Shown here in pieces: positions 6,766-53,940 of a stretch of DNA of 64,000 bases (position 1 is its first letter; each line of letters starts with the position of its first letter). The DNA lies in NCBI GenBank assembly GCA_950097015.1, contig CATNEN010000032.1:2108001-2172000 (forward strand), in the 5' to 3' direction. Origin of the DNA: Macrostomum hystrix (taxonomy: Eukaryota > Animalia > Platyhelminthes). The notes below the pieces were generated by a model that saw only the letters and a program-made list of their open reading frames with translations, was not told where the DNA came from and did not search any database. A program made the translations under genes and the position numbers.

Positions 6766-8949
6766 ACTGTCGCCCTTGGAAGCCAATCCGGATTATAACA
6801 GCTGCGTTTGAAAATTGCCAGTTGAAACTTGAGTCATCGCGAGAAAAGTTGATTTGTTCGAGCCTATTGAATGTTATTAATAAGAACAACCCGTTGAGAA
6901 CACCAACTCGACCGATTTCAATGCGTTCCGGCCGTGCCCCAGCCCACAGCTCTATGTCTCTCAATCTCTATATCTCCGTGACAGTGCGCCTCACCTCCAT
7001 GAGGGCCACAGAAGTCCTGAATAAACGGAAAAAAGACAGATTCCAATGAACTACGGATAGCCAAGCATATTCTACCGAGCGTCAGGCACACTTTTTTCAC
7101 TGAACTTCAATGCATTTCTAGAGATTTACTTGTAGAAACAAAAAATTAGACCTCGATTTCGAAGACCCAACGAGTGAGTTTAGTCTCATGGGAGAACTGG
7201 GCCATCAGTGTCACCTGCTGGAAAAGCTGAAGCAAAAAAAAATTGTGGATTAACAGCAGATGCAGTGCGAGCTGCCTCACTCCGTCAACTCTAAGCCATG
7301 GTACAAGCAGATGTATTTGAGCAGTTCTGAGCACAGCTGAAAAGTTTGTCAGATTGTCAGACGCTGAGAGGACGAGGATTCCTAGCTAAATGGCGAAAGC
7401 TGACTTCGGGTCAAGCTTTTTTCGTTTGCATTAGGATTCCTGTCCTTCTCTCGCTGGCTCCCCTCCCACAAATTTTGTTCTGACATCGAATCTCCATCTC
7501 CAATCCGCACTTCTCACTGTCTCATTCGAGACCTCAAATTTATTCCCGTGAGTGCTCACTCCTGACGGCGATGCCAGTTCAGCTCTTGCTGCGTGTCGGT
7601 CAGTCCTGCAGGTGCTGGCTCTAACACGCGATCCTGTTATGCACAGTGCCCACTTTGTTTAAAATGGCCATTCATGCAGCCGCAGCTCTGTTGCCACACT
7701 CATCCGGTTCTCAAGCTGCAGTGTTGAGCTGCTCAACACTTGCACGCTGACTCCACCTAGTCTCTGGGACGGGTCGCCCAATATTCCTCTCTCCTCTCCA
7801 ACCCTCTTTTTCATTCCGACCCTGAAACCACTGAGCACACCTCACTGGCTGCTCTGGGCTTAATTAAAAAGACGGAAGGTTATAGAGGTGCGTCTGGCGA
7901 GCTGGTGGCAACAGAGATTATTACGGGAATACTTTTGCGTGGCAACTGGACCAGGCACAATTGGCAGGCCAACCTCATCGCATATTCACACAAGTGGACC
8001 TTCTTTCTTTGCTCAAATAGCTGCTTAAACCGTTTCAGCTACTGAAAGAGTTCAGGCGAAAGGTAACAGACTAACTAAACGGTGCGAAATCCAAATCCTT
8101 CAGAATCTAATCCAGGATTAATCGACCCACACCAAAAATATCGCATTTTATAGGAGAAGAGAGACAGCACCCTAGAGATGGAGCAGAAGAAAGTGTTTAG
8201 TCGAGGCAGCTTTTTCATATCTGTTTTGAGTTTTCCTTTTAGTTTAGATGTGGGGGTCCTTGGGGCTAATCCTTGAAAGATGAGCGTTTCCCTGGGACGT
8301 GATTTTCAGCTCCGCATTGACATAGGCATTGACATGTGTGTCCTCTAGCTCACCACTAGTTATCCATCTCATATCCCAGTCTATCACGTTTCTTCTACGA
8401 GCCGTAGTTCAAAACTAATAATGAGAAATAGAAGAAACATCGGTTTGGCTGAGCTCAGCTGATGAGTCGATGGGGTTATTAAATACTATTTTTTCAGGAC
8501 ACAAGTTCGCCACTAGGATTCGTACCGATCGAAAAACAAAAAACATGAGGACATCCTATACTACTTTAAGTAAATCGGCAATTAAGTATGAGTGTTGTGG
8601 GGAGGATAAGCTAAGCTACTCAATAAGTAAATTTATAAAAGTTTCCAGAAGCCTGCTTTGCACAATGTCGAGGTCATTGTCACGGTCGGAAGCCGAGGCA
8701 CCTCGATGTGAACGCGGTGCCGACCTCCAGGCCTGCCAGGCACACCACAATGCCCAGAGTGACTCCGCAGAACACCCAGAAGAGGCACTTGTCGGCCGCG
8801 GACTCCAAGATGGCCCACTCGTTGTCAAGGATACCAGAGCGAGGAGTGGAATCTCTGGTGCAGTTTGAGCCAGATGATTCACCTGATGTGCCCACGGTGT
8901 TCTCTGGCGCGTCCTGCTTTTAAGTATAATTGAGAAATGTTTACTTATG

Positions 8950-9232
8950 CTTAATAATAACAATAATATTTGGTGACAGTAGACCCACAGCCAGTGATGT
9001 GTCAATTCTGTACTCAGGCACGCAGTCACACAGGTGTGTACATCTGTCCTGACTTTCTCATCGTCAGGCAGTTCACTCTCACTGTGCCTTGGAGGTTTGC
9101 CTAAAGGGCCGTAAATTGCACGACAAGCCCCCGAGCCATCTCTACCCAAAATAAATGAATTGGGCCTCGCCGCGGAATCGAGCTTAGGGATGCTGGTATG
9201 AGAGTCAAACGTTCTAGACCGCTCTGCGATCA
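8950..9232 (-). mobile_element. SINE family 1 copy in the last intron of copy A
   Basis: Shares the head and the body motifs ACTGTGCCTTGGAGG and ACAGGTGTGTACATCTG with the other copies. Confidence 0.75.
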
Positions 9233-11154
9233 CCACATCAGGAAATGTTAATTAGCAGCTTCTGAGGCGTGAGGGGCAGAGCGGTGACGCATCCGGTTTT
9301 CGCATGAAGGTCCCGAGCTTTGAATCCGTGTCGAGGCCACATTAGTTTAGTGCGAGGCTGAAGTAACAGCTCAGTCGCTGCCCCAACTATAATGGATCAG
9401 CTTGGCACTATTACTGTCACAGGTCGCTAGCAATGCAATCTTAGCAGCTTATGCTTACCACATTCGCCGAAACTCTCACTCGCGATCTGCTGAGAACCCA
9501 TCTATTGAGAAAGAGCAGCCGGATCATTTCATTGCTCACTCCACCGCCTCTGGCCTGTTTGAAGTGGCAGTCAAGTACAAAAGCGTTGCCAAGGACGTTA
9601 GCCATCGTCATGAAGACAGTCAGGCTGAAATACCAGGCTGCCAGGTGTCGAAGGAGACAGGAGTGGCTGATAACGCAATGCTGTGCATTTTGCATGTTAA
9701 CTGGTTGGTTTTAAAGCCCAAACTCACTGAGCAGTGGCACAGACTCGCTCTGAGTTGGCGTGTAGTTGCCAGCCAGCTGCAGGAACACGCACATGGACAG
9801 CACGATGGTGACGCTGAACGAGACTCGCTCGCTATCGTCTGGCGGCAGTCGGAAGGTCAGGGAGGAGATGGCGAGCAGCAGGATGCTGGGCAGGATCAGG
9901 TTCACCATGTAGAAGGTCGATCTTCGCGAAGCGCATAATTTTTGCGAAAAAATTAATAGAAACTGATAAAAAAACATTTTCTTTATAGCCTGCTTTAAAC
10001 AGTAGAAAGAGCACGGGAGTATTTCAAATGCCCCCATTTATCTTTCTGCATCTTCTAAATTATTCAAAAATCGGTCATTCGGTTTGGGAGCTATCATGAA
10101 GTAGGCATTAGGTAGGTAGGCATTTGAAATACGAGCTACCCCGTGGTCGTTCCTAGAGAGAGAAGAACCGTGGTATTTCTACTGTTAAAACTGGCTCGAT
10201 GTCTAGTTAAGTTAAGCTTTGAGTACGCAAATATTCTCACTCCTAGGCAGCATAAACACTGCATCTAGGGTCTTGGCCTTGGGGTCCTGTAGTCTCTAAA
10301 ATATCTCCTTGACTGCACTAGCAAGTGATCAGAGCTATCCGAAAAATACGAAAATACCGAAAAAGAGATATCCAGAAAGATTTGGTCAATGATTGTATTG
10401 ACCCCATCTTTTCTAATGGAGACGTCAATAATGCAAAACTCGTTGCTGTCCCTCAGTTCCGAAGCGACTGTTATGATTTGATACAGAGTTTTAACCTGCA
10501 GCGTGAGCTGTTGCACGCTTCTAGTTATGGAGACCAGCACCAACGGACAGGACTGGGTGTCGTAGGGGAAGGTTTGTAGCTGCATCGGGTACTTTGTTGT
10601 GACCAAGTACTGGCCAAGACGCTGAATATGCAGGCCACAGATTCGGCTTCTTGCACCCGCTGGGCACTCTTGGTGCAAATTCGTGTACGGAATAAGAGAA
10701 GCCTAGCTCTATGAACGATCAGAGAGTGCAATAAAACTATTATCTCACACGCCGTAGAAGAAGACATCAGGCTGCCACAGCACCGACGACGGCACGGCTA
10801 CATCCGTGATGGCATCCAGGCTGGAGTTGAATTTGCCAAGCCAAGCGAGGCGGCTGTCCAACCAGTTCTGAGGGTTGGCATGTGCTTGTGATTAGCCTTG
10901 ATCACCTGCTCACCAGTTCAAGCCAAAGCTGCAATGTTGTCTCCTGCGCTGCGGAATCCTGAAGTAAAGAGTCTCGAATAAAACTCGTATGTTTCTACTT
11001 CGGAATTTCATTAATTGTGCTTTATTCTGGTAATTTATTTGGTCCGTAGCCATGCCAGCCTACTTTACAATGGGATATGGGTATAGATCTTTGGGCGCGC
11101 ATTGCTATAGGATAGTTATAATGCGCTTCTGTTCTTCGTGGTACTCACGAAGTA

Positions 11155-12202
11155 ATTCAAATTCTAAATCTAATTCTAATTCTAATTCATAATTTAGACG
11201 GCCGATCGAGTATTCATCGATCTGGGACAAATCGATGAACCCGTCGTCCCACAGGGAAGGGAAAACTGTGGCGACCTTCTCCCAGCACACCGGCATAAAC
11301 TCTACCGTTTTCCAGAACGAAGTTCTCGCCATCAGCTCCTGCGCCCTGGAGCTGATCAACCAAAACGTCCACGGAGCAGAAATCTTCCTCCACTCGGACA
11401 GCCAGCCAGGTGGCGATCCATGCCCTTGGACGCACGCACACCTGCTCGCGCACAGTCCTCGACTGCGTCGCGCAACTCAACCGCTTAGGGACCCACAACA
11501 AGGTGTCCCTAAGGTGGATTCCAGGGCACTCAGGCCACCCTGGTAACGAACTGGCCGACAGCCTCGCCAAGGCCGGTTCGACGGGTTCGCTTTTTGGCCC
11601 CGTGCCTGCGACCTCCACCCCTACCGCCGTCGTCAACACTCGGATTAACCAGTGGGTGACCTCAAAGCACAAGGACAGATGGATCAATACCGCCGATTGT
11701 CGGCAGTCTCGCGCTGCTGTCCCTTGTCCCTCCACTGCCCTTCGCAAAGCCTTGCTTGGACTGAACCGCAAGGACATCAGGGCAGTTACCATGGCCCTCT
11801 CTGGCCATGGCTGTTTCGCCAGGCACCGCTTCCTGCAAGGCAAAATCCGCAGTGAGGAATGCCCCTTCTGCCTCTCCTATGTCGAAGATGCAGAGCATTT
11901 TATTTGCGACTGCCCCGCCTTCACTCAGGACAGGCTCACCTATCTCGGCCCAAACCCGGATCTCCCCGACGTTTTCAGGCCTGAGAACATCTGCCAGCTC
12001 GTCCGATACCTGAGGGCCACCGGGCGAGCAACCCTCTACCTCCTGGACTCTCCGGAGGAGGACCGCGCTGCGGACGCCGGCACCACCGGATCCCCCAGCG
12101 CGACACCGCAGCTTTAGTTGCCCGTGGTCGCCAGGGGCTAGCGGAATGGGCGGCAACGCCTCCCCGGAAGATGCCCCCTGCAGCTAAGTCAAGTAAGTAA
12201 GT
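11155..12202 (+). mobile_element. 5'-truncated non-LTR retrotransposon (RNase H + CCHC end of ORF2; I-group, Loa/Lian-like)
   Basis: RNase H motifs [34 protein letters not shown]; zinc knuckle [18 protein letters not shown]; stop at 12117; short 3'UTR ending in (AAGT)n. A 4-nt CCAG duplication near 11403 frameshifts the ORF. Confidence 0.9.
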
Positions 12203-13271
12203 ATCTAGGCTGGAGAAAACTACGAAAACTCCAACAGTGTTGGCTGTGCTATTCTCTTTTGAAGGCGGCGGTCTGACCTCTCTCCGATAGACTGACGGTT
12301 CTAGGAGTCGGAGGGAGGTCACGACTGTCTGACCTCCTCGTCTGGGGAAAGACTCCTTTCTGCTGCTGCTGCTGCCGCTGATGCTCCCGAGAAAGCAAGA
12401 GCAAATAAAAGCTGAGAAACTAAAGTATAAAAAGCAGAGCAGGGCATACTAGCGAAGTTTGAATCTATCTGACGAGTTTGAGCCCATTTTAAAGGCTTCG
12501 ATGCTGCTTATAAACTAGTGCCTCAGTTGAAGCCGCTGGATTCTATAGAATATTCTTCCAGAAAGAATTAACACACATGCAATAGCAAACATCTCACCAC
12601 ACGACAGAGCTACACTCTGGACCCCAAAAATCAATCTCAGAACTTCATATATCGAAAAATGCTAAACGTAGCACTTAAACATCCATAAGGGCTTTCTCGT
12701 CTCTCCGACGATAAGTACTTAGCAAAGCTTGGAGGCTAATTCCTTTAAATTCGATTCAGCCAAGCCTCAATTGATTTTCAAAACGAAGCAACTATACGCT
12801 CTCCAGGGCCGTTGAAAGGTTTATACACAGAGAAGGTTCATTCTCCAGTGATTGCATTTTGTAAGCTCAACTATGAAATTTGCTGACTAACTGGTACAAA
12901 ACCAGTCTGAAATGACTCCACAGTAGCTCTCTCATGATCTACAATGGCACTGACCTACGGAGTCACTGCATTTGTTCACTTTGCCAAAAAGTTTTTCAAT
13001 AACAACCAGTATTTACCCGACTGTTTGAACAGAGTCGATTGATTTTCTGAGAATGTTTGAGAATGATGAGAGGGGAGCCACTGAGCAGTCATTGGCTGTG
13101 TGGGTTTCGAGGGGAAGAGGCACTGAAAGGCAAAAGCTGTCTGAGCAGGCGGATGCACAGCAAATATAGAAATGCTTCCCATCTCGGTCTGTGTGCCTAT
13201 CAGAGGCCAGGAGATCATTTTGCCACAAAATTTACCTGGACCAAATGGACGATCACAAAGCAAGGCCCATC

Positions 13272-15488
13272 ATGACTCGGTCACTCGGCGTTGCCCTCAT
13301 ATTCGGCATTCTAGCCTCCAGCTCCGCAGCACAGCCCAGCCGTGTTTCCATCGAAGAACAGGCCATGTCGGTGCTGGGTCTGCGCGACGGCGCCTACAAC
13401 AAGGACGTCAGGCCGCCGCCTGATGCCGGGCAGGCCAACACCGTTACCATCACGATTCAGCTGAATAGCCTGGTTAAGGCGGTGAGCCTCCTATGCATTG
13501 TTATTGATAACTCTGGTATGAATTGGGGGTGAGTAGCAGAGCGTCTAACGCGTTTGACTCTCGCACCAGGGTCAATGCGTTTCGGACGCAGCCGCGGAGA
13601 GAAGGCTTCGTGGCTTGTCATGCAAATTTCGCCCTTTGAGGGCCAACCTCCAAGGCACAGTGAGTGTACACTGCCTGACAATGAGAAAGTCAGGGCAGAT
13701 GTACACACCTGTCTGAGTGGTGCCTGCGCACGGTATCTATGTGCGTGTGTGCTCAGGAGTCAGCGAAATGAGAAGAATGGCCTCCTCGCTGGCTACAGGT
13801 CTACTGTCAATAAATGATGTGCCATTGCCCGCAGCCCTCTTGCAACTATTATTTTTGTCATTGGTATAAATTATATTTTTGTGATTGAATTTTTCCTTTC
13901 TAGGACTCTTCAGCTCAACAAATCACTCTCCAGGTCTGGTTGGGATTGGTAAGACAGATCGCGCCTTATTCAAATTAGTATGTATGAAGGTACTTTCTTA
14001 TAGAAAATAAGTGATTAAAAACACTGCAGAAATGGCTGGACAGTCGGCTAGCGTGGCTGGACAAATTCAACTCCAGTCAGGCCATGGCTAACTTGACGGA
14101 AATGCTCGTGCCCACAGAGCGAATCTGGACTCCGGATGTAACATTCTACGATGTGTGAGGCAATGATCTACTTTTATTCTGATTAATGGCCCCTGAATGT
14201 TTCACCTGTTTTTTGAGTCCCAGAGGTTTTTTACTCCGAAGTTTTCTTCACATTCTAAGGTTTGGTTGCCCTATAATTTCACACCTAGTTTCACTAACAT
14301 CTATCGGAACAGGATGGACGTCAAGGACCTCACAGGCACCGTTGCCCAAATCCAGCTGAGCAGCAATGGAATGGCTCATCGCATAATGGGCCAACTGCTG
14401 ACAGTCAAGTGCGGCATGGCGATGCTTCACTTTCCTTATGATAGGCAGTCCTGCGTTGTCAAGGCTTCCACCATGATGCAGAGACAAGAGAAGCTGAAGC
14501 TGAGGATTGAAGAACAAGCCGCTCTGACGACTTTTCTAGTCAGAAGCAACGAATTCTGCCTGCAGAACCTGAGTCTTCGCATTGTACAAGCTGCTGATTA
14601 TGAATATGCAGAGTTCTTGGTGTCATTTCAAGTGAGTTCTATTACGGATCTGTCCTAACTATTGGCTTTCAGCTTTGAACCGTTTTCTCTTCAATGCTCA
14701 CCGAGATGTCTGACGTCTTCTTGTCTTCCTCACAGCGCATGTCGACCTTCTACATGGTGAACCTGATCCTGCCCAGCATCCTGCTGCTCGCCATCTCCTC
14801 CCTGACCTTCCGACTGCCGCCTGAGTGCGGCGAGAGAGTTTCGTTCAGCATCACCATCGTGCTGTCCATGTGCGTGTTCCTGCAGCTCACAGGCAACTAC
14901 ACGCCGACTCAGAGCGAGTCTGTACCCCTTCTCAGTGAGTACTTCGCTCTCTTAGATATCAAAATTCCATAATGCAAACGAGACAGGGGAGGGATGAGAG
15001 AGAGATGATACAGGGAAAAGATGAGACAGGTGTTGGAAGGGGCAACGGGCCGTATTTGGGAGCTTCGAGGGCCGCATCTGGGAGTTTGCCGACTAATGTG
15101 GGCTAGGCCATCATTTCATTTTCAATGTGTCATTTCAGCATGCTACTGCAGTCTGGCAGTCGTCATGACCATTGGTACAGTTTTCGGCAACACATTCGTG
15201 CTGAGCTGCCACCACAGGCAGACGAAAGAGTCTCGAGTCGATAATCGGTTAGTTCGGCTAATCTTTCTCAGCCGCATGGCTGCCTGCAGTGATAAAACGC
15301 GTAAAAAGGCCATTACACCTGTTAATGATGAGCCTGAGACATTCGCCAATGAATGGGCGGCCGTGGCCAGAGCAGCCGATCACTGCTTCTTCCTGCTCAT
15401 GCTGGCCATAACACTGGCCCTAGCTCTGGCCCTAGTCATCATTGAGTTGTCAACCTCCACTGGTCATTGTCTGGGGTCCAATGAATAG
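13272..15488 (+). CDS. Divergent nAChR/5-HT3-like cation Cys-loop receptor subunit, copy B, 415 aa; exons 13272-13481, 13904-13948, 14030-14154, 14313-14631, 14736-14934, 15139-15488
   Basis: Phase-consistent model (1248 nt). Signal peptide, RPP motif, WLDSRLAW, IWTPDVTFY, Cys-loop CGMAMLHFPYDRQSC, M1-M2 PPECGERVSFSITIVLS, and MA/M4 NEWAAVARAADHCFF. Confidence 0.92.
13525..13855 (+). mobile_element. SINE family 1, near full length (about 330 bp), in intron 1 of copy B
   Basis: GGGGGTGAGTAGCAGAGCG head, conserved body, and tail GCCATTGCCCGCAGCCCTCTTGCAACTATTATT. Confidence 0.8.
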
Positions 15489-15796
15489 ACCGAAGATTTG
15501 CGCACACACGGAAACCGAGAGCCTCAATGAGATTTTTCCCCGAGGATGAAAACCTACTGTTAGAGTTATTTACTTCCCATTCTCAGTTACTCCGCCAAAA
15601 AGTAAGTGCTTGTACTAGTTGTATCTAGATTCAAGTGGTAGTAATTTTAGAACACTTAGAGTTGGCAATCAATACAAACCAGCAAGCTGCTGTTTAAACG
15701 TTGTGCTGGATAAATACAGCTGGTAGATAAGGCAAGAAATTTATATTGAAAATTCTCCGGAGCTAATATTTCACCAGTGAAACTCAACCCCATCGA

Positions 15797-16778
15797 ATTT
15801 CTGCACCTGTTCTTCACTAGCTTAGACTACTCTTACTTGAGAGTTTGAGAGCATCAAATTTCTGCACCTGTTCTTCACTAGCTTAGACTACTCTTATATG
15901 AGAGTTTGAGAGCATCAAATTTCTGCACCTGTTCTTCACTAGCTTAGACTACTCTTATATGAGAGTTTGAGAGCATCAAATTTCTGCACCTGTTCTTCAC
16001 TAGCTTAGACTACTCTTACATGAGAGTTTGAGAGCATCAAATTTCTGCACCTGTTCTTCACGAGCTTAGACTACTCTTACATGAGAGTTTGAGAGCATCA
16101 AATTTCTGCACCTGTTCTTCACGAGCTTAGACTACTCTTATATGAGAGTTTGAGAGCATCAAATTTCTGCACCTGTTCTTCACTAGCTTAGACTACTCTT
16201 ACATGAGAGTTTGAGAGCATCAAATTTCTGCACCTGTTCTTCACTAGCTTAGACTACTCTTACATGAGAGTTTGAGAGCATCAAATTTCTGCACCTGTTC
16301 TTCACTAGCTTAGACTACTCTTACATGAGAGTTTGAGAGCATCAAATTTCTGCACCTGTTCTTCACTAGCTTAGACTACTCTTACATGAGAGTTTGAGAG
16401 CATCAAATTTCTGCACCTGTTCTTCACTAGCTTAGACTACTCTTATATGAGAGTTTGAGAGCATCAAATTTCTGCACCTGTTCTTCACTAGCTTAGACTA
16501 CTCTTACATGAGAGTTTGAGAGCATCAAATTTCTGCACCTGTTCTTCACGAGCTTAGACTACTCTTACATGAGAGTTTGAGAGCATCAAATTTCTGCACC
16601 TGTTCTTCACTAGCTTAGACTACTCTTATATGAGAGTTTGAGAGCATCAAATTTCTGCACCTGTTCTTCACTAGCTTAGACTACTCTTACATGAGAGTTT
16701 GAGAGCATCAAATTTCTGCACCTGTTCTTCACGAGCTTAGACTACTCTTACATGAGAGTTTGAGAGCATCAAATTTCT
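15797..16778. repeat. Tandem array, 61-bp unit, about 16 near-identical copies
   Basis: Unit AAATTTCTGCACCTGTTCTTCACTAGCTTAGACTACTCTTACATGAGAGTTTGAGAGCATC, with no spacers. Confidence 0.95.
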
Positions 16779-17344
16779 ACCTGTAAAAATCGGTGACGCA
16801 CTGACGATTGGAGATAACTCGTATACTTTCAGTTGCGCCTCTGCTCTGCCCGGAATATATCCTTTATCGTGACCAACTCTCAATGATGTTAGCACTATAG
16901 CAACTGTCTCTTTTAGTAATGCCACAGGACTACAATATTTTTTTTGCTTTTTGTAATTCATACTTATTTTGTTACATGTTTGGCACCCAAAATGGCGCTA
17001 TTTCAAATACTAATTATTTATATATCGCCATAAAGATTGTCATGAAAATAGTTAAATCTAAATCCATATAGACGTACAAAAGTGAACAGCTGAAAGTCAT
17101 CCATGCACAATAAATAGCAAGTAGATAAAGACAATAAATTTTAGTTTACACACGCGTCAAATTTCGTTATGAAACAAGAACAAGTCTATGTATCCCATAT
17201 TATGATGTATTTGGGATTTTTTCGCTTCCTTGTCCATAAAAACGCTGTGCCGCGACTTTCACGTCCTTCTGCCCGTTCTTTTTCGTTTGTTATTTATCTG
17301 CACTTTATACTGTTTAACTTTATTTTCTCACCCTCTCCCTGCTC

Positions 17345-17800
17345 GTTGATTGGTCATTCTATAATTGTTCTTTCTCTCGTGTCCAATCGTGTATTTCACC
17401 CCTCCCCTCACCCCCTCACCCACCCCCTGTCACGCACCCCCCTCACCCATTCTATAATTGTTCTTTCTCTCGTGTCCAATCGTGTATTTCACCCCTCCCC
17501 TCACCCCCTCACCCACCCCCTGTCACGCACCCCCCTCACCCATTCTATAATTGTTCCTTCTCTCGTGTCCAATCGTGTATTTCACCCCTCCCCTCACCCC
17601 CTCACCCACCCCCTGTCACGCACCCCCTCACCCATTCTATAATTGTTCTTTCTCTCGTGTCCAATCGTGTATTTCACCCCTCCCCTCACCCCCTCACCCA
17701 CCCCCTGTCACGCACCCCCTCACCCATTCTATAATTGTTCCTTCTCTCGTGTCCAATCGTGTATTTCACCCCTCCCTCACCCCGTCACCCACCCCCTGTA
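17345..17800. repeat. Tandem array, about 92-bp C-rich unit, 4-5 copies
   Basis: CATTCTATAATTGTTCTTTCTCTCGTGTCCAATCG recurs about every 92 bp. Confidence 0.9.
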
Positions 17801-18425
17801 TTTCATCTCTTACCCTCTGGCTCGTCCTCACTTCTCTCACCCCTTTAACCCCCTGTTTTTCTCGTGCTATTTAAATACTTGCTTTTGCACTCTTTTTGAG
17901 ACGGTCTCTCATTGCGAAGACTCAATTTATTGCATGAGTATAAAAAGAAATCACTAATTGTATTAGGAAATATTTATATAAATATATTTATATAGGTTGC
18001 TATGACAATCAGACCAAGCTAAGTATTTGCACTGCTAGCAGAAATACAGACATCGTACCTCGTATTTGCAAATCTGTTGCTTACACAGGGATGGACAAGA
18101 TTATTTACTGGTGTCAATTTATTTGGGAACTTGGGAGTGTTTGACTTGCACTGAATTTCACTACCATTGTCCTAATGCAAAGTGATTCGTAGGATCGGTG
18201 CGAATTATAGTAAACCAAATAGGAGCCCTTTTAAGCATGCTTGATTGGCCAAATAAGCACAATCCCATCATGCCATGTTCAAACATAGCTTCCCAAACTG
18301 TTGTTGATTTTATGAGAAGCGCGCGCTTAAATTTGCCAGATCTCGTTCTTACTCCTAATTTCCATCACATAGTGGCCTCTATCCTGCATTTAGAGAAGCT
18401 TTAGAGCTTCGCGCAGTGCCTGTTC

Positions 18426-20894
18426 ATGGTCTTCCTCCAGACTTTGTTCGCCCTTTGCTTCTGCTGCAGCGGTTTCTTGGCACAGACGACCTCCGGTGAC
18501 TGGACGCAGTCGCCGGATGAGGCTCTGATGCGAGGACTAGGACTAACTGGTGGTTACTGCATTGGGGCCAGACCACCTCCGGACAATGGCACCGCTAACA
18601 TCATCAGCGCCTTCGTGCAGTTCGCCAGTTTGGTCAAAATGGTGAGCTTTGTCAGCATCGAAAAAACGATTGACCGAACTTTATATCGTTCTGCTGCCTT
18701 TAAAAAATTTTAGGAATCCACTGCTCAACATCTGACGCAACAGCTCTGGCTCTCTCTGGTAAAAAACTAGCAATTAGTCTGAACTAGCATGAATTATTCA
18801 CAATGTATAGCTTGTTGTTTAATAAGACAGAAGCTATTACATGTTCGTTTTTACTCGTAGAACTGGGTTGACAAGCGGCTTGCCTGGCTTGGAAAATTCA
18901 ATTCAAGCTTCGATCACGTTGACAAAATTTTGGTGCCAAGCAGTCAGATCTGGCAGCCGGACTTTAGTTTCTATGATGTGTGAGTACACATTTTTTGTGT
19001 TCGCATGCAAACCACCTTGGATTGGCACCAGCATCTTGCTTGGTGATAAGAAAATATGAATTTGTGCTTTTGTCTCATTCTTACTCAAAACTCGCAATTA
19101 TTGCACACATCTCAATCATTCCATAGAATCGAGGTAAAAGACCTCACCGCGGGCAAGTCGTCAGTCAAAGTGTTAAAAAACGGTCGAGTGCATTCTATAA
19201 TTGGTGTGCAGGTGATCTCAAAGTGTCAGCTCAAGCTGCTTCAGTTTCCCTACGATCGGCAGACCTGCGCAGTCAAGCTCGCGCCCAATATGGACGATCC
19301 GGACTTCATCACCTACCAGGTGGGCTCGCTGGGTTCCAACGACACCGTGACGGACTACCTGACAGAGAGCAACGAGTTTTGCCTGCTTACCATGGGCATC
19401 GGTTTAAAAATATTTCCCCGCTATTCTTATGTTGAGTTCAGCATCAGCTTTCAGGTTCGCTGCTTTCCTGTCGCGTGTGAATCATTTTATTTGTTGTTTC
19501 AATGAAGTAAATTTTCCGCAAATTACAGCGAAGATCGACCTTCTACATGGTGAACCTGATCCTGCCCAGCATCCTGCTGCTCGCCATCTCCTCCCTGACC
19601 TTCCGACTGCCGCCTGAGTGCGGCGAGAGAGTCTCGTTCAGCATCACCATCGTGCTGTCCATGTGCGTGTTCCTGCAGCTCACAGGAAACTACACGCCAA
19701 CTCAGAGCGAGTCTGTGCCCCTGCTCAGTGAGTCTTTCGTATGAACATTGGCATTCCATTTCCTATGGAGACATTATTCACGTGGACTCAATATATACTG
19801 TTCTGCTACGTTGAATTTAAACTGCAGCGTGTTACTATAGCCTGGCGGTCCTCATGACGATGGCAAATGTTCTTGGAAATGTTTTCGTTCTTAGCTGCCA
19901 CCAACTGAGCCATCAAGAAGACGCCTCTGTTGGCAGTCGGATCATTCGGCTGGTTTTTCTTAATCGGCTTGGCTCAGCCAGGAGTAAAACTGGACCTGTA
20001 ACGCCTACCTGTGTGAGTTGGTCTATTAAGCTCAGGCGAACAGTTTTTTTAGAAATAATGAAAATGCTCTCAGGGCCATGAAAATACTGACTCATGCTTT
20101 CCAAAGACCACTAATAATAATAATAAATAATTGCAGGAGTGCTGCGGGCAATGGCACATCATTTGGTGACACTGGACCCACAACCAGCGAGGTGGTGATT
20201 CTGTCCGTTCCTCAGACCCCTGAGCACACACTCACACAGGTGTGTACATCTGACTTTCTCATCGCCAGTGTACACTCTTACTGTGCCTTGGAGGTTGGCC
20301 CTAAAGGGCGTAGATCGCACGTCAAGCCCCTAAGCCTCCTCTCAGCGGCTGCGCCCCAAATGAATGTGGCCTCGCCGCGGAATCGAGCTCAGGGACCTTG
20401 GTGCGACAGGCAAACGCGTTAATAGCTCTGCCACTCACACCATACAAGGACATTTAAAATTCATGGGAAAATTGTTGAAGGCCGATTTTCGCTGAAACTG
20501 CATTAGTGAGATAGGCAATGTGTTAATTAAACGAATAAAGTTGAGTAACAACTATGCAATACATTCCAGTTGAAGTGGTCATTGGTTGCTCTAAATCCTA
20601 TCACACGTTTTACATGTTAACGTATGAAGCATTCTAGTTTTTTTTGACCTTCTAATTGTTTTATTAAATCAACAGGTGCAAGACCAGCTGCAGAGTGATC
20701 CAGGCAAGTCAGCTTCTATAATCGGTGACGTCAGCTCATACAATGACAACGAATGGGCCATTGTTGTTCGAGCTGCCGACAAATGCTTCTTTATTGTGCT
20801 GTTGAGCATCGTGATCCTACTGACTGCTGCTCTGATTGTCATTGAACTGCTGGCGTCGAGGTTGGAATGCCTTCGTGAAGTTCAGAACCTTTGA
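18426..20894 (+). CDS. Divergent Cys-loop receptor subunit, copy C, 436 aa; exons 18426-18641, 18714-18758, 18861-18979, 19127-19454, 19529-19727, 19828-20012, 20676-20894
   Basis: Phase-consistent model (1311 nt). Cys-loop CQLKLLQFPYDRQTC; same M1-M2 as copy B; NEWAIVVRAADKCFF before M4. Confidence 0.92.
20110..20440 (-). mobile_element. SINE family 1, full length with (ATT)n tail, in intron 6 of copy C
   Basis: A/B-box head at the right end, body motifs, and TAATAATAATAATAAATAATTGCAGG tail at the left end. Confidence 0.8.
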
Positions 20895-21224
20895 ATACGC
20901 GCTTAGGTAGCGATTATCCGCCATGCTATTTAGGAAAATTGAAAGCCTAGTTAACAGTTTTTTCTCATTGAAATCGTCTATTTCGCAAGATTTCGGCTAT
21001 TATAGCAACTCCGTACTTAGATCTTCTAAAACATCTTTGTGATCTTTGACCTCTTCGCATCAGATTTTGATAGCCATTACTAATATATAGGGTACTTTAC
21101 TTGTAGTTTGTAATAACTAACTGTTTTTAACTATCTAGAAAAATAAAAAAGCAAAGTAAAGCAAGCCATTTTGCGACGGTCCGCTGAAATTCCGCAGGCC
21201 CCTTAGCACGCACAGATACGCGAT

Positions 21225-21400
21225 ACATGTTGGCAGGCACACACTCACACAGGTGTGTTCATTGTACTATAGGGGTTGGCCTATATTGGCGTGAAAGCCC
21301 CCCCCAAGTCTTTGTTACCACGGCTGCGCTCAATTTTTTTTTACTTAGCAACAGACTCAAGCTCAGGGATTTTGGTGGAAGAGGCGGATGCGTCACTACT
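21225..21400 (-). mobile_element. SINE family 1, degenerate copy
   Basis: ACACTCACACAGGTGTG, GGGGTTGGCC, CACGGCTGCGC and GCTCAGGGA fragments occur in family order. Confidence 0.55.
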
Positions 21401-21641
21401 CGGACACTGAACCCTATTTTGGGTACATGTTTTTACACGCAATTCCTTATGAATAACAGGCACTGCTTGCTGCTCGCGAGTTAGTTTAAAATTAGGCTTT
21501 ACACACAAAACGTATCGAAGAACTTGGCTGCTGATGCACAATGTCTCGTGGTCTAAGAGCATGGTCAGTTCGTACGAGTCAATCAACGTACATCAATGCG
21601 TTTCTGCAACTCAAAAAAATTATTAACTAAAAGTGCTCATT

Positions 21642-24600
21642 TCAGTTTTTGATGCAATCCGGTGACGCAGTGACGGCTTGAATAATTGCCAAAGCGATCA
21701 CGGTGACGCAGGTGAGGAAAGCGAACGCCACGAACAGGCAATCGTCGGCTACCGCAACCACCGTGCGCCATTCGTTTTCAGCATTCTGCAGAGAATTTTC
21801 GGAGGCTGCAGAAGAGCTGTTGAGCATAGTCGGGTCATTCTGAAGGAATAAGTACATTCAGGAACATTTTAGAACTCAAAGTTTTGATTGATGGTCCCGA
21901 AATAAACTAACTTAATAGAATAGCTGAGATAGATGTCTTTGGATTAATATGAGCTTAAACATTTTGAATTTTATATCGCCTAATGGAACTTAGAAGACAG
22001 ACACATGAACCTCAATGCATTTAACTGCAGTGATGTCTGTTAGTGGGTGTTATTGGTAAACTAACCTCGGATGGCTCACGATTTGGTGAGCGCTTAAATA
22101 CCATCAGAATGAACCGATTGAGAAACAGAAAGCGAACAAGCCGGCTGTGGACCTTGCTGCTCTTCTCGTGCCAAAAGTGGCAGCGCAACACGAAAACATT
22201 GCCTAGAACATTGGCCATGGTCATGATCACCGCCAGGCTATAGTACAGCGCTAAAATGCGATGTACGATTTTTTATTTATTTACTGCTTGAAGTTGGTTC
22301 TCAAATGCTGATCCGACTCACTCAGCACGGGCACAGACTGGCTCTGAGTCGGCGTGTAGTTGCCTGTGAGCTGCAGGAACACGCACATGGACAGCACGAT
22401 GGTGATGCTGAAGGAGACTCGCTCGCCGCACTCAGGAGGTAGGCAGAAGTTTAAGGCTGAGATGGCGAGCAGCAGGATGCTGGGCAGGATCAGGTTCACT
22501 ATGTAGAATGTTGGCAAACGCTGTCGGTCAATGGAGAAAAGTTTTAAAGAACTTTGAGCTTCGGACATCCGAGCGAGAGGTCGGGAGTTCGGATCTCAGT
22601 TCACCCTCGTGAAAAAGGATAGTTGCATCAGCTCGGTAAAAACTGGGTTGGGTTTTGCAGCCTCCGGGGGTGGGTGGCAGAGCGGTTTAACGAGTTTGCC
22701 TCTCGAACCAATGTCCCTGATTCCGCGGCGAGGCCACGTTTATTTGGCGCGCAGCCGCGGAGAGAAGGCTTGGGGCTTATCGTGCAATTTAAGCCCTTGA
22801 GGTCCAACCTCCAAGGCACAGTGAAAGTGTACACTGCCTGACGATGAGAAAGCCAGGGTAAACGTCCACACTTGTCTGAGTGTGTGCCTGCGTACAGTTA
22901 TCCGCTGGCAGGATTACCCGAAATTCGATTTCAATGGCGATGCGGTCATAAGCCAGGCCTGTGAATGGCTTGTCCATGGTTGCCTTGGTCAGGCAGTACT
23001 CGTTGCTGGCTGTATAGTTGTCAGTCGGCAGCTTCATGACGCCGTGAACCTCCTGGTTCAATCGCAACCTCAGAGTGTCACTGTACTGAACCATGGAGGC
23101 TATGTACTGGTGGCAGTTTTGCACGTCGAATGGAAAAGCAATCATTTGCATGCTGCACTTTAAAGTTGTCAGGTATTCGATGTCGCTTGAGATCTGTCCG
23201 TCGCTCATCAGCCTGAGCAGGATTATGTCACTCGACACTCGTTTAGAGTCGACTCTTGGGTTGGAAAGTTTTTTATTGTCTTGGCATTGATTATTGATTT
23301 GTATATTTTAGGCTGTCCTTAGCTTGCAGTCTACTTCATTAATCTAAGTAACCAGACTAAATTATGCATACGCTCGCACTCCTTCCTTGTCCTTGTCCAC
23401 TGTCCTTGAAAGGCCCGCATTCTCGTGAGCCGTTTCTCTCGCGACTCCAATCTCTCCCGTGTCTCATCTCTCCCGTGTCTCATCTCTCCTGTGTCTCATC
23501 TCTCCCGTGTCTCATCTCTCCTGTGTCTCATCTCTTCCGTGTCTCATCTCTCCCGTGTCTTATCTCTCCCGTGTCTCATCTCTCCTGTGTCTCATCTCTC
23601 CTGTGTCTCATCTCTCCTGTGTCTCATCTCTCCGGTGTCTCATCTCTCCCGTGTCTCATCTCTCCATTTTCAATCCAGCCCACTGACCTATTCTATTTTC
23701 TCTCTGAGCATAGATCTCACGGATCCAAGCAGTTGAACTCACAAGTCGTAGAAGGTCACATCCGGTAGCCAGGAGGCGCTAGCAGGGAGAAGGATGCTGC
23801 TGATGTTGTCTAGGCTGGAATTGAACTTTCCCTGCCATGCCAGTCGAGTGTCTCTCCAGCTCTTTAAATTTTTAAGAAAGAAATGGTATTCATTTTTGCT
23901 TTTTCCTTTATCATAGAGAGTAGACTATATCAGAGAGAGAGAGAGTAGACTATATCAGAGAGAGAGTAGACTATATCAGAGAGAGAGAGAGTAGACTATA
24001 TCAGAGAGAGAGTAGACTATATCAGAGAGAGAGAGAGTAGACTATATCAGAGAGAGAGAGAGAGTAGACTATATCAGAGAGAGAGAGAGTAGACTATATC
24101 AGAGAGAGAGAGAGTATACTATATCAGAGAGAGAGAGAGTAGACTATATCAGAGAGAGAGAGAGTAGACTATATCAGAGAGAGAGAGAGAGAAGACTATG
24201 TCAGAGAGAGAGAGAGAGTAGACTATATCAGAGAGAGAGAGTAGATTATATCAGAGAGAGAGTAGACTATATCAGAGAGAGAGAGAGTAGACTATATCAG
24301 AGAGAGAGTAGACTATATCAGAGAGAGAGAGAGTAGACTATATCAGAGAAAGAGAGTAGACTATATCAGAGAAAGAGAGTAGACTATATCAGAGAAAGAG
24401 AGTAGACTATATCAGAGAAAGAGAGTAGACTATATCAGAGAGAGAGTAGACTATATCAGAGAAAGAGAGTAGACTATATCAGAGAAAGAGAGTAGACTAT
24501 ATCAGAGAGAGAGTAGACTATATCAGAGAAAGAGAGTAGACTATATCAGAGAAAGAGAGTAGACTATATCAGAGAAAGAGAGTAGACTATATCAGAGAAA

Positions 24601-25567
24601 GAGAGTAGACTATATCAGAGAGAGAGAGTAGACTATATCAGAGAGAGAGTAGACCATATCAGAGAGAGAGTAGACTATATCAGAGAAAGAGAGTAGACTA
24701 TATCAGAGAAAGAGAGTAGACTATATCAGAGAAAGAGAGTAGACTATATCAGAGAAAGAGAGTAGACTATATCAGAGAAAGAGAGTAGACTATATCAGAG
24801 AGAGAGAGTAGACTATATCAGAGAGAGAGTAGACCATATCAGAGAGAGAGTAGACTATATCAGAGAAAGAGAGTAGACTATATCAGAGAGAGAGAGTAGA
24901 CTATATCAGAGAGAGAGTAGACTATATCAGAGAGAGAGAGAGTAGAATATATCAGAGAGAGAGAGAGTAGACTATATCAGAGAGAGAGTAGACTATATCA
25001 GAGAGAGAGAGAGTAGACTATATCAGAGAGAGAGAGAGTAGACTATATCAGAGAGAGAGTAGACTATATCAGAGAGAGAGAGTAGACTATATCAGAGAGA
25101 GAGAGAGTAGACTATATCAGAGAGAGAGAGTAGACTATATCAGAGAGAGAGTAGACAGAAAGTAAAGTGAGTGTAAGCAAGAGAAAATAAATTGTAAAAC
25201 ATCCACAAACCAGGGTAAGCCAAAGTTGCATCACAATCTGCTGTTGCGCTGTATCCTGTCAAAGAGCCAGAGAATAAAAATGAGCACAATCATTGAACAG
25301 CTTTCCTTAGCAAAGGCTCTGTTTTGGTTAATATGCTGTTAGTCAGCATGAAGTGAGGCTACTCACCACACTGACAAGGCTGACCAAGTTGACACTGACC
25401 GTCACGGTGTTGGCAGTGCCATTGTCTGGAGGCGGCCGGGCTAGAGCATTGTAGTTGCCACCGGGCAGTCCCAGAGCTTTCAGCACTGTCTCATCTGGCG
25501 ACTCGGCAGTGTTGGCCCGGACAACAATGGCCAACAATGCGGCGATGCAGGAGAGAAGCTGCAGCAT
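21642..25567 (-). CDS. Divergent Cys-loop receptor subunit, copy D, 427 aa; exons 25567-25367, 25255-25211, 23861-23743, 23254-22918, 22520-22322, 22250-22066, 21839-21642
   Basis: Phase-consistent model (1284 nt) with intron positions and several exon sizes (45, 119, 199, 185 nt) matching copy C. Cys-loop CSMQMIAFPFDVQNC. Confidence 0.92.
22665..22915 (+). mobile_element. SINE family 1 copy in intron 4 of copy D
   Basis: GGGGTGGGTGGCAGAGCGGTTTAAC head and CAACCTCCAAGGCACAGTG body. Confidence 0.8.
23440..23665. repeat. Minisatellite, about 17-bp unit GTGTCTCATCTCTCCC
   Basis: Direct inspection. Confidence 0.9.
23915..25160. repeat. Compound repeat (GA)n-GTAGACTATATCA filling intron 2 of copy D
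   Basis: Direct inspection; the (GA)n tract length varies from unit to unit. Confidence 0.95.
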
Positions 25568-26565
25568 TTTCGGGGCTGCAGAGTTTCTGTCGACTCGGTT
25601 TGACATCATATATAAATAGTTTAATAGGATCTTCCAACTAACTAAGTGTAGCTAATGGGGTTTATGCTGCCAGCTACTCAATCAACATCGCTGGCTACTA
25701 GTTCCATCCAGTTAGTCAAATAGATGGCATAGGCAAACAGTCTATGTGCACAAATTGCATTTGCGAGTGGGAATCAGACCTAGCAATTAAGGAGTTGATT
25801 GACGTTGAGAAAGGTGGAGTGATCACACTCTGTTTGTCAGTTTGATGGTGATGACGGGAAATTAAAACCCGCTCAGTCAGTCTATGCCAAGGTCACCGTT
25901 TTCACATTCAGTTGATACTGAGTGACGCCTATTCACTAGACCCAATCTCTGATACTCAAGGTAATTCAACTTCAACGGATCCTGGGATCAGAAAGTCACT
26001 GCGATGTGATGGCCTCTCAATTTTCCTCAAATCGATCGCGATCGTTGCAATTGAAAGTCCCTTGTGTTACTGGTAGACAGACCCGCTATTTCCCCCTGGG
26101 GAAGGACCATGGGGTATTTCAAATCCCCATTGCCTACTTCACGATAGCTCCCAAGCCGAATGACCGACTTTCGTGATGAAAGTCCACCATATGGATGAAC
26201 ATTTTGTGCCATTAAAAAAATTAATTAATTAAATGGCGACTGGTTGAAACTAGTTTGCTGTTTTCACTGTCATCATTGCATCAGTTTGAATTTTTATGTT
26301 AGTTAAATGCAAGTTCAGTAACATCAATTAGTCAAGTCAACACACGTAGCTAGGCGAACTGCATGGCTGAATCAGACAATGACCGCTATTATCTATCGGC
26401 TTAGTTTTCAAGTACATGTTAAATTATTTAGGGTAGGACTTTCTGCGGCGGCTGCAGTATGAAACAGTAGACCGGACAAGTTCGTCAGACTAACTACTCG
26501 AACTCATCACAGATTTCTCAAAGTCTGAGGAAGGAATTTTTGTAACAAGACCCCGGCTACTGCTA

Positions 26566-26890
26566 GGGGGTGAGTGGCAGAGCGTTCTAACCGTTTGCCT
26601 CTCGCGCCAAGGTCCCTGAGCTCCATTTCGCGGCGAGGCCACATTCATCTGAGGTGCAGCCGCGGAGAGAAGGCTTGGGGGCTTGTCGTGCAATTTACGC
26701 CCTTAAGGGCCAACCTCCAAGGCACAGTGAAAGTGTACACAGCCTGACGATGAGAAAGGGCAGATGTACACACCCCTGTGTGAGTGTGTGCTCAGGAGTC
26801 AGCGAAATGGGCAGAATTGCCTCTTCGCTGACTACGGGTCTAGTGTCAGCAGATGATGTGCCACTGCTCACAGCCCTCCTGCAATTATGT
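26566..26890 (+). mobile_element. SINE family 1, full length
   Basis: GGGGGTGAGTGGCAGAGCG head through to the CAGCCCTCCTGCAATTAT tail. Confidence 0.8.
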
Positions 26891-51845: not shown

Positions 51846-52309
51846 GTCACTTTTCAAAAGAGGACTGCTCACAGCCTTATTGAGAACTTTTTACGAGAAT
51901 TTAGAGAATATAGAGACTCATTGTTTCTGTGTTTTCAAATGCCATAGTAAATTTTAAAGTGTCCAATATTTTCAATCTGTCTGCTTCATTCTATGATTGT
52001 TTAAGAATCTTTAGGTGCAACATTGAATGAAATTTGTCAAATTATTCACCTTTTTGTTAAGCCTTTGAGTGGTTTGCCCCGCAGTCCGCTACAGTCAGTT
52101 TAATTGCAAATTTGCTCCTCATCTGAGCTGGAATTATTTTTCACAAATTGAGTCTGCCAGGTAAAACCCCTGGTTGCTATGCGACGCTGTGTTTAGTGAA
52201 GAGGAATTTTCTGTCTTAGAAGCAGAAGGAGAAGCAGAGAGTTTTTTTACTCAGTAACTGTTGTCGCTTCGCTTCCTGACTTACAAGTAAACATTGAAGT
52301 TCTTTATTT

Positions 52310-53757: not shown

Positions 53758-53764
53758 GCTGTGT

Positions 53765-53940
53765 GTACATCGACAAAACTTAGTGACACTAGACCCGCAG
53801 CCAGCGAGGAGGCAATTCTGCCCATTCCGCTGACTCCTGAGCACACACGCACACAGATACTTTACCCTCAGGCATGCACTCACACAGTTGCGTATATCTG
53901 CCCTGATTTTGTTATCGTCAGGCAGTGTACACTTCCACAG
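53765..53940 (-). mobile_element. SINE family 1, 3' fragment
   Basis: GTGACACTAGACCCGCAGCCAGCGAGGAGGCAATTCTGCCCATTCCGCTGACTCCTGAGCACAC. Confidence 0.75.

What the first reader, a model, noticed from the sequence alone, without database searches (positions are those of the whole stretch)
14736..19727. Pore exon (M1-M2) is homogenised between paralogs while ligand-binding exons diverge
The 199-nt exons of B (14736-14934) and C (19529-19727) share an uninterrupted identical run of about 100 nt. Past the first two codons I count only about 5 differences, all synonymous. The same exon in the inverted copies A (~9729-9927) and D (22322-22520) also carries long identical tracts (GTGAACCTGATCCTGCCCAGCATCCTGCTGCTCGCCATCTC; CACCATCGTGCTGTCCATGTGCGTGTTCCTGCAGCT). 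Flanking introns, the extracellular exons and the M3-M4 exons do not align at this level. Identity at synonymous sites points to exon-restricted gene conversion, giving a shared channel module coupled to variable sensor modules, as in constant/variable receptor families. Even pseudogene A retains the tract.
Basis: partly seen in the sequence, partly recalled or inferred. Interest (0 to 1): 0.78.

Follow-up and report, generated by a model that had tools for sequence, protein, structure and literature searches.

The report
Gene-converted pore exon in flatworm channels
Four old neighbouring ion-channel genes of a Macrostomum flatworm, one of them dead, carry a nearly identical copy of the one exon that builds the pore, most likely because that exon keeps being copied between them (gene conversion); the process is well known, and this scan saw it before at two other loci of this genome.

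Summary
The window holds four Cys-loop (nicotinic-type, cation-pore) receptor paralogs. B, C and D are intact; A is a pseudogene.

- **The exon.** The 199-nt exon 5 (pre-M1 Arg, M1, M2) is 83-96% identical in DNA between copies. B and C differ at 8 of 199 nt and share a 98-nt perfect run.
- **Synonymous sites.** NG86 dS in exon 5 is 0.13-0.44. In every other exon pS is 0.59-1.27 (essentially saturated), and protein identity there is 23-67%. Flanking introns show no detectable similarity.
- **Not protein conservation.** The start of M3 is also conserved as protein, yet its synonymous sites are highly diverged.
- **Not codon bias.** Shuffling synonymous codons within the exon gives a mean of 38 identical codons (maximum 49) against 57 of 63 observed.
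- **Older duplication.** M. lignano proteins show that the B/C duplication predates that lineage split, yet B and C have the more similar exon 5.

Best reading (about 0.8): interlocus gene conversion confined to the only segment still similar enough to pair. The "constant/variable receptor" analogy fails, because each gene has its own exon 5.

The scan already reported the same process at two other loci of this genome, another Cys-loop cluster and a TRPV cluster.

The parts
14736..14934 (+). Gene B exon 5 (199 nt): pre-M1 Arg, M1, M1-M2 loop with the GER motif, M2, start of the M2-M3 linker. This is the homogenised segment.
   Evidence: AG/GT splice sites. Pfam Neur_chan_memb E 5.8e-13. 8 of 199 nt differ from C.
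19529..19727 (+). Gene C exon 5, homogenised segment.
   Evidence: Aligns to human alpha-7 nAChR residues 205-270, E 6e-13.
9728..9926 (-). Pseudogene A exon 5. It is intact in length and frame and 93% identical to C, but the acceptor dinucleotide is CG instead of AG.
22322..22520 (-). Gene D exon 5, 88% identical in DNA to B and C. Its differences cluster at nt 1-21, 63-84 and 181-198.
13272..15488 (+). Gene B, 415 aa, six exons: 13272-13481, 13904-13948, 14030-14154, 14313-14631, 14736-14934, 15139-15488. There is no intron between M3 and M4.
   Evidence: Open frame, all introns GT-AG. Pfam LBD hits on exons 3 and 4.
18426..20894 (+). Gene C, 436 aa, seven exons: 18426-18641, 18714-18758, 18861-18979, 19127-19454, 19529-19727, 19828-20012, 20676-20894.
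   Evidence: Pfam LBD hit on exon 4.
21642..25567 (-). Gene D, 427 aa, seven exons: 25567-25367, 25255-25211, 23861-23743, 23254-22918, 22520-22322, 22250-22066, 21839-21642.
8680..12500 (-). Pseudogene A. The exon 1 remnant has a frameshift and lies about 12500-12206. Then exon 2 at 10958-10914, exon 3 at 10867-10749, a shortened exon 4 at about 10648-10358 with the first Cys-loop Cys replaced by Tyr, exon 5 at 9926-9728, exon 6 at 9637-9459 and exon 7 at 8913-8680.
11410..12117 (+). Retroelement fragment (RNase H) lying where A's exon 1 donor site should be.
   Evidence: Pfam PF00075, E 2.7e-8. A's exon 1 has no GT donor.

Best explanation
**What it is.** Four old, tandem and inverted paralogs of an orphan cation-type Cys-loop receptor lie within 17 kb. 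They diverged long ago: introns are unalignable and synonymous sites are essentially saturated.

**Proposed mechanism.** The M1-M2 exon has stayed very conserved as protein. It is therefore the only stretch with enough DNA identity to pair with a paralog during repair of DNA breaks. Non-allelic (interlocus) gene conversion then repeatedly copies part or all of this 199-nt exon from one copy into another, which renews the identity and keeps the process going.

**Why the tract matches the exon.** Tracts cannot extend into the diverged introns. Homogenisation therefore looks exon-restricted and is weakest at the exon's edges. The dead copy A takes part as well.

**Shown and inferred.** Shown: the mosaic of synonymous divergence, the failure of codon bias to explain it, the greater age of the duplication relative to exon 5 similarity, and the pseudogene state of A. 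Inferred: the repair mechanism itself, homology limitation as the reason for the exon-sized tract, and GC-biased conversion as the cause of the raised GC3.
For: 1. Exon 5 has dS 0.13-0.44, while pS is 0.59-1.27 in exons 1-4 and 6-7 for all six pairs.
2. In a sliding window, pS falls to 0.00-0.46 only inside exon 5. It is back at 0.50-0.89 in the first 22 codons of M3, although pN there is only 0.10-0.23, and it is 0.60-0.83 in the conserved exon 2/3 window with pN 0.13-0.20. Protein conservation alone therefore does not lower pS in these genes.
3. Identical codons at identical amino acids: B-C has 57 of 63 in exon 5 against 56 of 140 elsewhere (Fisher p 3e-12). All six pairs give p of 3e-4 or lower.
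4. Shuffling synonymous codons among positions of the same amino acid within each exon 5 keeps the exon's own codon bias. It gives a mean of 38.1 and a maximum of 49 matches for B-C against 57 observed. None of 10,000 shuffles reaches the observed value in any pair.
5. Runs of identical codons over silent sites along the whole gene: 0 or 1 of 10,000 permutations reach the observed run for A-B, A-C, B-C and B-D.
6. Introns flanking exon 5 show no similarity above shuffled controls.
7. In the ligand-binding-domain tree, window C groups with M. lignano C' (P0153 residues 586-1001) at 97/94 support and excludes window B. Yet in exon 5, B-C are 98.5% identical as protein against 91-94% to their M. 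lignano counterparts. B and C share Ser and Ile where both lignano copies have Ala and Val.
8. A has at least four disabling lesions, yet its exon 5 is 199 nt, open and 93% identical to C.
9. GC3 of exon 5 is 0.80-0.86 against 0.42-0.79 in the other exons, which fits GC-biased conversion.
10. Parsimony-informative sites within exon 5 conflict: nt 6 and 171 group A with C and B with D, while nt 100 groups A with D and B with C.
Against: - No orthologous DNA was available. It is therefore untested whether exon 5 is also unusually similar at synonymous sites between species, which would point to constraint rather than conversion.
- The concerted-evolution signal against M. lignano rests on two amino-acid sites plus distances. 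The exon 5 protein tree is unresolved.
- Clustering of synonymous differences within exon 5 is only weakly significant: p 0.012 for B-D, 0.037 for A-B, not significant for the other four pairs.
- The conflicting informative sites are only three and could be homoplasy.
- No reads could be laid on the assembly.
- The tract ends coincide with the exon ends within about 10 nt. That would also be expected under selection acting on the exon.
Confidence: 0.8

Rival explanations
1. There has been no copying. Exon 5 is kept similar at synonymous sites by selection or mutation bias acting on the DNA or RNA itself: very strong codon preference, splicing enhancers, RNA structure or editing sites, or an overlapping element.
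For: - GC3 of exon 5 is high, 0.80-0.86.
- The similar tract matches the exon boundaries.
- The M2 core is invariant as protein across all ten M. lignano family units, so the exon is under unusually strong constraint.
- The antisense frame of exon 5 is open in all copies.
Against: - Within-exon synonymous-codon shuffles never reach the observed codon identity.
- The predicted RNA fold is no more stable than shuffles, z 0.16, and no Rfam family matches.
- D carries at least 8 third-position changes within nt 9-84, so these sites can vary.
- Differences are denser at the exon ends, the reverse of what splicing-enhancer constraint predicts.
- Pseudogene A keeps the similarity.
- Other regions conserved as protein have highly diverged synonymous sites.
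Confidence: 0.1
2. The similarity is an assembly or polishing artefact: reads of one paralog's exon were used to build or correct the consensus of the others.
For:
- The genome is rich in repeats.
Against: - The four copies are all different, with 8 to 33 differences per pair, and each sits in its own frame with its own splice sites.
- Polishing cannot create 90% identity from saturated sequence.
- Independently produced M. lignano gene models show the same protein-level pattern in neighbouring subunits.
Confidence: 0.04
3. The homogenisation is favoured by selection. Identical pore modules let subunits with different sensor domains assemble freely into one channel, and conversion is the means by which the pore co-evolves across subunits.
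For: - M2 is identical in the three intact genes.
- TLR1/TLR6 are a published precedent: conversion limits divergence of the transmembrane and signalling part while the ligand-binding part diverges (PMC2077338).
Against: - Nothing here separates selected conversion from neutral conversion.
- Purifying selection on the protein already explains identical M2 across species.
- The dead copy A is converted too, which fits a passive process.
- Co-assembly of these subunits is unknown.
Confidence: 0.06

Closest known systems
Interlocus gene conversion limited to a conserved domain of tandem receptor paralogs, as in mammalian TLR1/TLR6 (Kruithof et al. 2007, PMC2077338)
   Same: - The paralogs are tandem.
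- The ligand-binding part diverges, while the transmembrane or signalling part is kept nearly identical in DNA by conversion.
- Paralogs resemble each other more than they resemble their orthologs in that part.
   Different: - The tract here is a single 199-nt exon, not about 900 nt of an intronless coding region.
- Four copies take part, two of them inverted and one dead.
- The between-species evidence here is protein-level only.
Concerted evolution by conversion in protocadherin, opsin, globin and CEACAM clusters (from my own knowledge, apart from CEACAM, whose title and abstract appear)
   Same: Mosaic genes in which some exons are homogenised between neighbours and others stay old and different.
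   Different: - Protocadherin and UGT1A clusters also share true constant exons by splicing. This cluster does not.
- The gene family is different.
Nicotinic-type (cation-selective) Cys-loop receptor subunits such as alpha-7 nAChR and 5-HT3A
   Same: - Exon 5 aligns end to end with alpha-7 residues 205-270, E 6e-13, and has Glu at the position of alpha-7's GEK motif.
- Pfam LBD and transmembrane domains are found.
- B, C and D have the C-x13-C Cys-loop.
   Different: - No vicinal Cys pair is seen in the loop C region.
- The ligand-binding exon 4 has no match to any solved structure at E 0.01 or below.
- The M3-M4 loop is very short.
- The ligand is unknown.
Earlier notes of this scan on the same genome: s1-339195 (three intronless Cys-loop receptors with a gene-converted pore segment) and s1-270690 (TRPV paralogs that are conversion mosaics)
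   Same: Same genome, same kind of mosaic, and in the first case the same protein superfamily and the same segment.
   Different: - The loci and genes are different.
- Here the genes have introns, so the tract equals one exon.
- I could not see or check those sequences.

Membership tests
Interlocus (non-allelic) gene conversion / concerted evolution | A segment is far more similar between paralogs than the rest of the genes, at synonymous sites too. | tested here: met
   dS is 0.13-0.44 in exon 5, while pS is 0.59-1.27 elsewhere. Sliding windows confirm it. Fisher p ranges from 3e-12 to 3e-4.
Interlocus (non-allelic) gene conversion / concerted evolution | The similarity is not explained by codon usage. 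| tested here: met
   In within-exon synonymous shuffles, none of 10,000 reaches the observed codon identity in any pair.
Interlocus (non-allelic) gene conversion / concerted evolution | In the segment, paralogs within a genome are closer to each other than to their orthologs, and the segment tree disagrees with the flank tree. | tested here: inconclusive
   - Protein level only.
- The LBD tree groups window C with M. lignano C' at 97/94.
- In exon 5, B-C are 98.5% identical against 91-94% to their lignano counterparts, with two shared derived residues.
- The exon 5 tree is unresolved.
- No orthologous DNA was available.
Interlocus (non-allelic) gene conversion / concerted evolution | The copies are real and separate in the genome, shown by reads spanning each copy and its flanks. 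| not testable with these tools
Indirect support: the copies differ from each other and have their own splice sites.
Cys-loop pentameric ligand-gated ion channel, cation-selective nicotinic/5-HT3 branch | The Neur_chan_LBD and Neur_chan_memb domains are present. | tested here: met
   PF02931 on exons 3 and 4 and PF02932 on exon 5, all above the curated cut-offs.
Cys-loop pentameric ligand-gated ion channel, cation-selective nicotinic/5-HT3 branch | The Cys-loop has two Cys residues 13 residues apart. | tested here: met
   Present in B, C and D. In A the first Cys is replaced by Tyr.
Cys-loop pentameric ligand-gated ion channel, cation-selective nicotinic/5-HT3 branch | There is a Glu at the cytoplasmic mouth of M2 (the GEK/GER ring), and the best matches are to cationic members. 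| tested here: met
   The alignment to alpha-7 puts GER on GEK. The best 60 solved-structure hits are all nAChR or 5-HT3A.
Acetylcholine-binding alpha-type nAChR subunit | Loop C carries a vicinal Cys-Cys pair. | tested here: not met
   No CC pair appears in the region before M1 in any copy. The genes are therefore not filed as alpha subunits, and the ligand is unknown.
Constant/variable receptor cluster (protocadherin/UGT1A type) | Many variable exons are each spliced to one shared set of constant exons. | tested here: not met
   Each gene has its own exons 5-7 and its own stop codon, with canonical splice sites. Splicing itself could not be checked with RNA reads.

The most novel reading that the evidence does not exclude
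Pore-exon conversion may be a selected, family-wide feature of flatworm orphan Cys-loop receptors. Under this reading, many subunits with very different sensor domains are kept compatible for mixed assembly because their M1-M2 module is continually equalised by conversion. That would give a combinatorial receptor repertoire with one common channel. The recurrence in at least two clusters of this genome, and the near-identical M2 of neighbouring M. lignano subunits, do not exclude this.
Probability: 0.12. Interest if true: 0.7.

Novelty: new member of a known kind. Interest (0 to 1): 0.4.

Why it matters
- **A clean example.** This is a well-controlled case of how gene conversion can be confined to the one exon that purifying selection has kept similar. 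One part of a receptor ends up evolving in concert while the ligand-binding part diversifies freely.
- **A caution for phylogeny.** For Cys-loop receptors, trees or dating built on the transmembrane region can mislead in expanded invertebrate families.
- **Literature.** A full-text search of the held library found no paper combining gene conversion, concerted evolution and ligand-gated ion channels. The process itself is textbook.
- **Context in this genome.** Together with the scan's other two loci, it suggests that interlocus conversion is common among clustered channel genes in Macrostomum.

Tried and rejected
- **Orthologous DNA.** The look-up of encoding contigs had no record for P0004 or P0005. 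All close relatives are UniRef-only M. lignano proteins without contigs. The search for homologous proteins with P0004 returned only itself.
- **RNA-level constraint.** The exon 5 fold has z 0.16, and there is no Rfam match in 8000-27000. Rejected as an explanation.
- **Codon bias alone.** Rejected by the within-exon shuffle.
- **Extension into introns.** An apparent A-C similarity just upstream of exon 5 did not exceed shuffled controls.
- **Further copies.** A local tblastn and blastn of the window found no fifth copy.
- **Mosaic substructure inside exon 5.** It is suggestive at most.
- **tblastx of the whole window.** This gave almost no output. I replaced it with an all-against-all blastp of open segments.
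- **Joined models.** The spliced models were sent to database tools exon by exon, by reference only. Joined coding sequences were built only inside scripts, to check frames, make codon alignments and search the window itself.


Full report
**What is there**

The region 8.6-25.6 kb holds four paralogs of a Cys-loop ligand-gated ion channel. A and D are on the minus strand, B and C on the plus strand.

I built the gene models from open segments conserved between the copies, from splice sites read in the DNA, and from a scan for the expected 45-nt micro-exon.
- B (415 aa, six exons), C (436 aa, seven exons) and D (427 aa, seven exons) give uninterrupted frames with GT-AG at every intron.
- Pfam finds Neur_chan_LBD on exons 3 and 4 and Neur_chan_memb on exon 5.
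- Exon 5 aligns end to end with residues 205-270 of human alpha-7 nAChR, that is the pre-M1 Arg, M1, the M1-M2 loop, M2 and the start of the M2-M3 linker. GER sits on alpha-7's GEK. The best 60 matches listed, out of 96 solved-structure matches, are all nAChR or 5-HT3A chains, so the pore is of the cation type.
- No vicinal Cys pair is seen before M1, and the ligand-binding exon 4 matches no solved structure at E 0.01 or below. These are orphan, non-alpha-type subunits.

**Which organism**

The scan's earlier notes name the genome as a Macrostomum flatworm. In agreement, the only close relatives among 1.84 billion representative proteins are five Macrostomum lignano UniRef entries, with 75-89% identity over exon 5. 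The next hits drop to 59% or less.

Outside exon 5 those proteins are only about 49-67% identical to the window's genes. The window is therefore either another Macrostomum species or an old duplicate.

**A is a pseudogene**

- Its exon 1 has a frameshift between the SPDEEV and RPPP motifs.
- Exon 1 has no donor site, and a retroelement fragment (RNase H, 11410-12117, plus strand) lies there.
- Exon 4 is shortened, cannot be joined in phase, and has Tyr in place of the first Cys-loop Cys.
- The acceptor of exon 5 is CG instead of AG.
- Even so, its exon 5 is 199 nt, open, and 93% identical to that of C.

**Checking the observation**

- B and C exon 5 differ at 8 of 199 nt. Three differences are in the first two codons and five later ones are all synonymous. 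The longest identical run is 98 nt.
The exon is at 9926-9728.

Per-exon Nei-Gojobori estimates, computed on codon alignments made exon by exon:

| Region | DNA identity | Protein identity | Synonymous divergence |
|---|---|---|---|
| Exon 5 | 83-96% | 80-98.5% | dS 0.135 (B-C), 0.143 (A-C), 0.256 (A-B), 0.35-0.44 (pairs with D) |
| All other exons | 40-66% | 23-67% | pS 0.59-1.27, essentially saturated |

In a sliding window of 22 codons:
- pS falls to 0.00-0.46 only inside exon 5.
- pS is back to 0.50-0.89 in the first 22 codons of M3, where pN is only 0.10-0.23.
- pS is 0.60-0.83 in the conserved exon 2/3 window, where pN is 0.13-0.20.

So conservation of the protein does not by itself lower synonymous divergence in these genes.

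The 120 nt of intron on each side of exon 5 show no similarity above shuffled controls in any pair, and the four-way alignment collapses just past the splice signals.

**Is it more than codon bias or chance?**

- Exon 5 does have raised GC3, 0.80-0.86 against 0.42-0.79 in the other exons.
- I shuffled synonymous codons among positions of the same amino acid within each copy's exon 5, which keeps that exon's own bias. The observed number of identical codons was never reached in 10,000 shuffles for any of the six pairs. For B-C, 57 of 63 were observed, against a shuffle mean of 38.1 and a maximum of 49.
- Identical-codon fractions in exon 5 against the rest of the gene differ with Fisher p from 3e-12 to 3e-4.
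- A Sawyer-type run test on silent codons along the whole gene gives 0 or 1 of 10,000 permutations reaching the observed run for A-B, A-C, B-C and B-D, 68 for A-D and 263 for C-D.

**Other constraints on the DNA**

- The exon's predicted RNA fold is no better than shuffles, z 0.16.
- Rfam has no match in 8000-27000.
- D carries many third-position changes in nt 9-84, so these sites are free to vary.

**Age of the duplication relative to exon 5**

One M. lignano model (P0153) is a fusion of neighbouring genes. It holds the M1-M4 part of a B-like subunit (residues 232-410) followed by a complete C-like subunit (586-1001).
- In a tree of the ligand-binding exons, window C groups with this C-like subunit at 97/94 support and excludes window B. 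The B/C duplication therefore predates the split between the two lineages.
- In exon 5 the order is reversed. B and C are 98.5% identical as protein, against 91-94% to their lignano counterparts.
- B and C share Ser and Ile at two sites where both lignano subunits have Ala and Val. The Met/Arg difference at codon 2 follows the B-like/C-like pairing (B and B' Met, C and C' Arg), as expected if the first codons lie outside the tract.

This is the signature of concerted evolution, but it rests on protein sequences and few sites, and the exon 5 tree itself is unresolved.

**Mechanism**

The best explanation is interlocus gene conversion.
- The copies lie 2.6-12.4 kb apart, in both orientations.
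- Exon 5 is the only stretch with enough identity for heteroduplex formation, so tracts start and end inside it.
- This explains both the apparent exon restriction and the higher density of differences at the two ends of the exon.
- Each event renews the identity that allows the next one.
- The dead copy A takes part, which fits a passive repair process.
- The raised GC3 fits GC-biased conversion.
- Three informative sites within the exon support conflicting groupings. Synonymous differences are clustered in B-D (p 0.012) and A-B (p 0.037) but not significantly in the other pairs. Several separate events are therefore likely but not proven.

**What is not supported**

- Each gene has its own exon 5, M3 and M4 exons and stop codon. 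Nothing is shared by splicing.
- The M2 core is invariant as protein in all ten family units found in M. lignano models. Ordinary purifying selection already gives a common pore, and nothing here shows that conversion itself is favoured.

**Known parallels**

- The closest published parallel I read is TLR1/TLR6. [quoted passage not shown]
- The library held no paper combining concerted evolution, gene conversion and ligand-gated ion channels. A hit in a nematode channel review was only a CRISPR reference.
- This scan had already reported the same process in the same genome on other DNA: another Cys-loop cluster (s1-339195) and a TRPV cluster (s1-270690). I could not check those. They are leads that suggest the process is common among clustered channel genes in this animal.

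**Limits**

No reads were laid, so the assembly, the expression and the splicing are unchecked.
- No orthologous DNA could be obtained. The decisive comparison of ortholog dS in exon 5 remains to be done.
- Spliced models went to database tools exon by exon, by reference. Joined sequences were used only inside scripts, and the joined search step was left out.

**Verdict**

This is a real, statistically strong mosaic, best explained by exon-sized interlocus gene conversion (about 0.8). It is a new example of a known process, of moderate interest.

Noticed in passing
window 8968-9234, 13525-13865, 20110-20444, 22666-22898, 26564-26902; also 1-86, 43534-43620, 53758-53938, 59397-59596: An interspersed repeat of about 300 nt, 72-88% identical between copies, lies in a different intron in each of the four paralogs: A intron 6, B intron 1, C intron 6, D intron 4. 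It also occurs elsewhere in the window. It looks like a MITE- or SINE-like element inserted independently.
   Followed up: partly
window 15139-15488 (B), compared with 19828-20012 plus 20676-20894 (C): B has M3, the short cytoplasmic loop and M4 in one exon. A, C and D have a phase-0 intron there. This is an intron loss in B or a gain in the others.
   Followed up: no
window 11410-12117 (+): A retroelement fragment with an RNase H domain (PF00075, E 2.7e-8) sits where pseudogene A's first intron should begin.
   Followed up: partly
window 13904-13948, 18714-18758, 25255-25211, 10958-10914: All four copies keep a 45-nt micro-exon (exon 2) that encodes a 15-residue stretch of the form D/E-S/T-x-x-Q ... 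L-W-L-x-L. I found it only by scanning for AG...GT windows of that length.
   Followed up: yes
window 15669-16883, 23869-25257, 3149-4250, 5532-6400, 52211-53000, 56218-57130, 58164-59143, 61226-62700: The window holds very many minisatellite arrays with units of 8 to 61 nt. One lies just downstream of gene B and another fills most of D's second intron.
   Followed up: no
window 28665-28961 with 36984-36690, and 29390-29797 with 57664-58054: Two further repeat pairs, 83-84% identical, lie outside the receptor cluster. Their nature is unknown.
   Followed up: no
P0153, P0001, P0003, P0007 (M. lignano UniRef models): The public M. lignano models of this family are fusions of two or three neighbouring receptor genes, sometimes with unrelated sequence such as a C-type lectin or low-complexity tails. 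These are annotation artefacts, but they show that the family is clustered there too.
   Followed up: partly
window 9717-9926 (+), 14733-14945 (-), 19526-19738 (-): The antisense strand of exon 5 is open in one frame for about 70 codons in the copies compared. This is probably a side effect of the GC3-rich codon usage.
   Followed up: no
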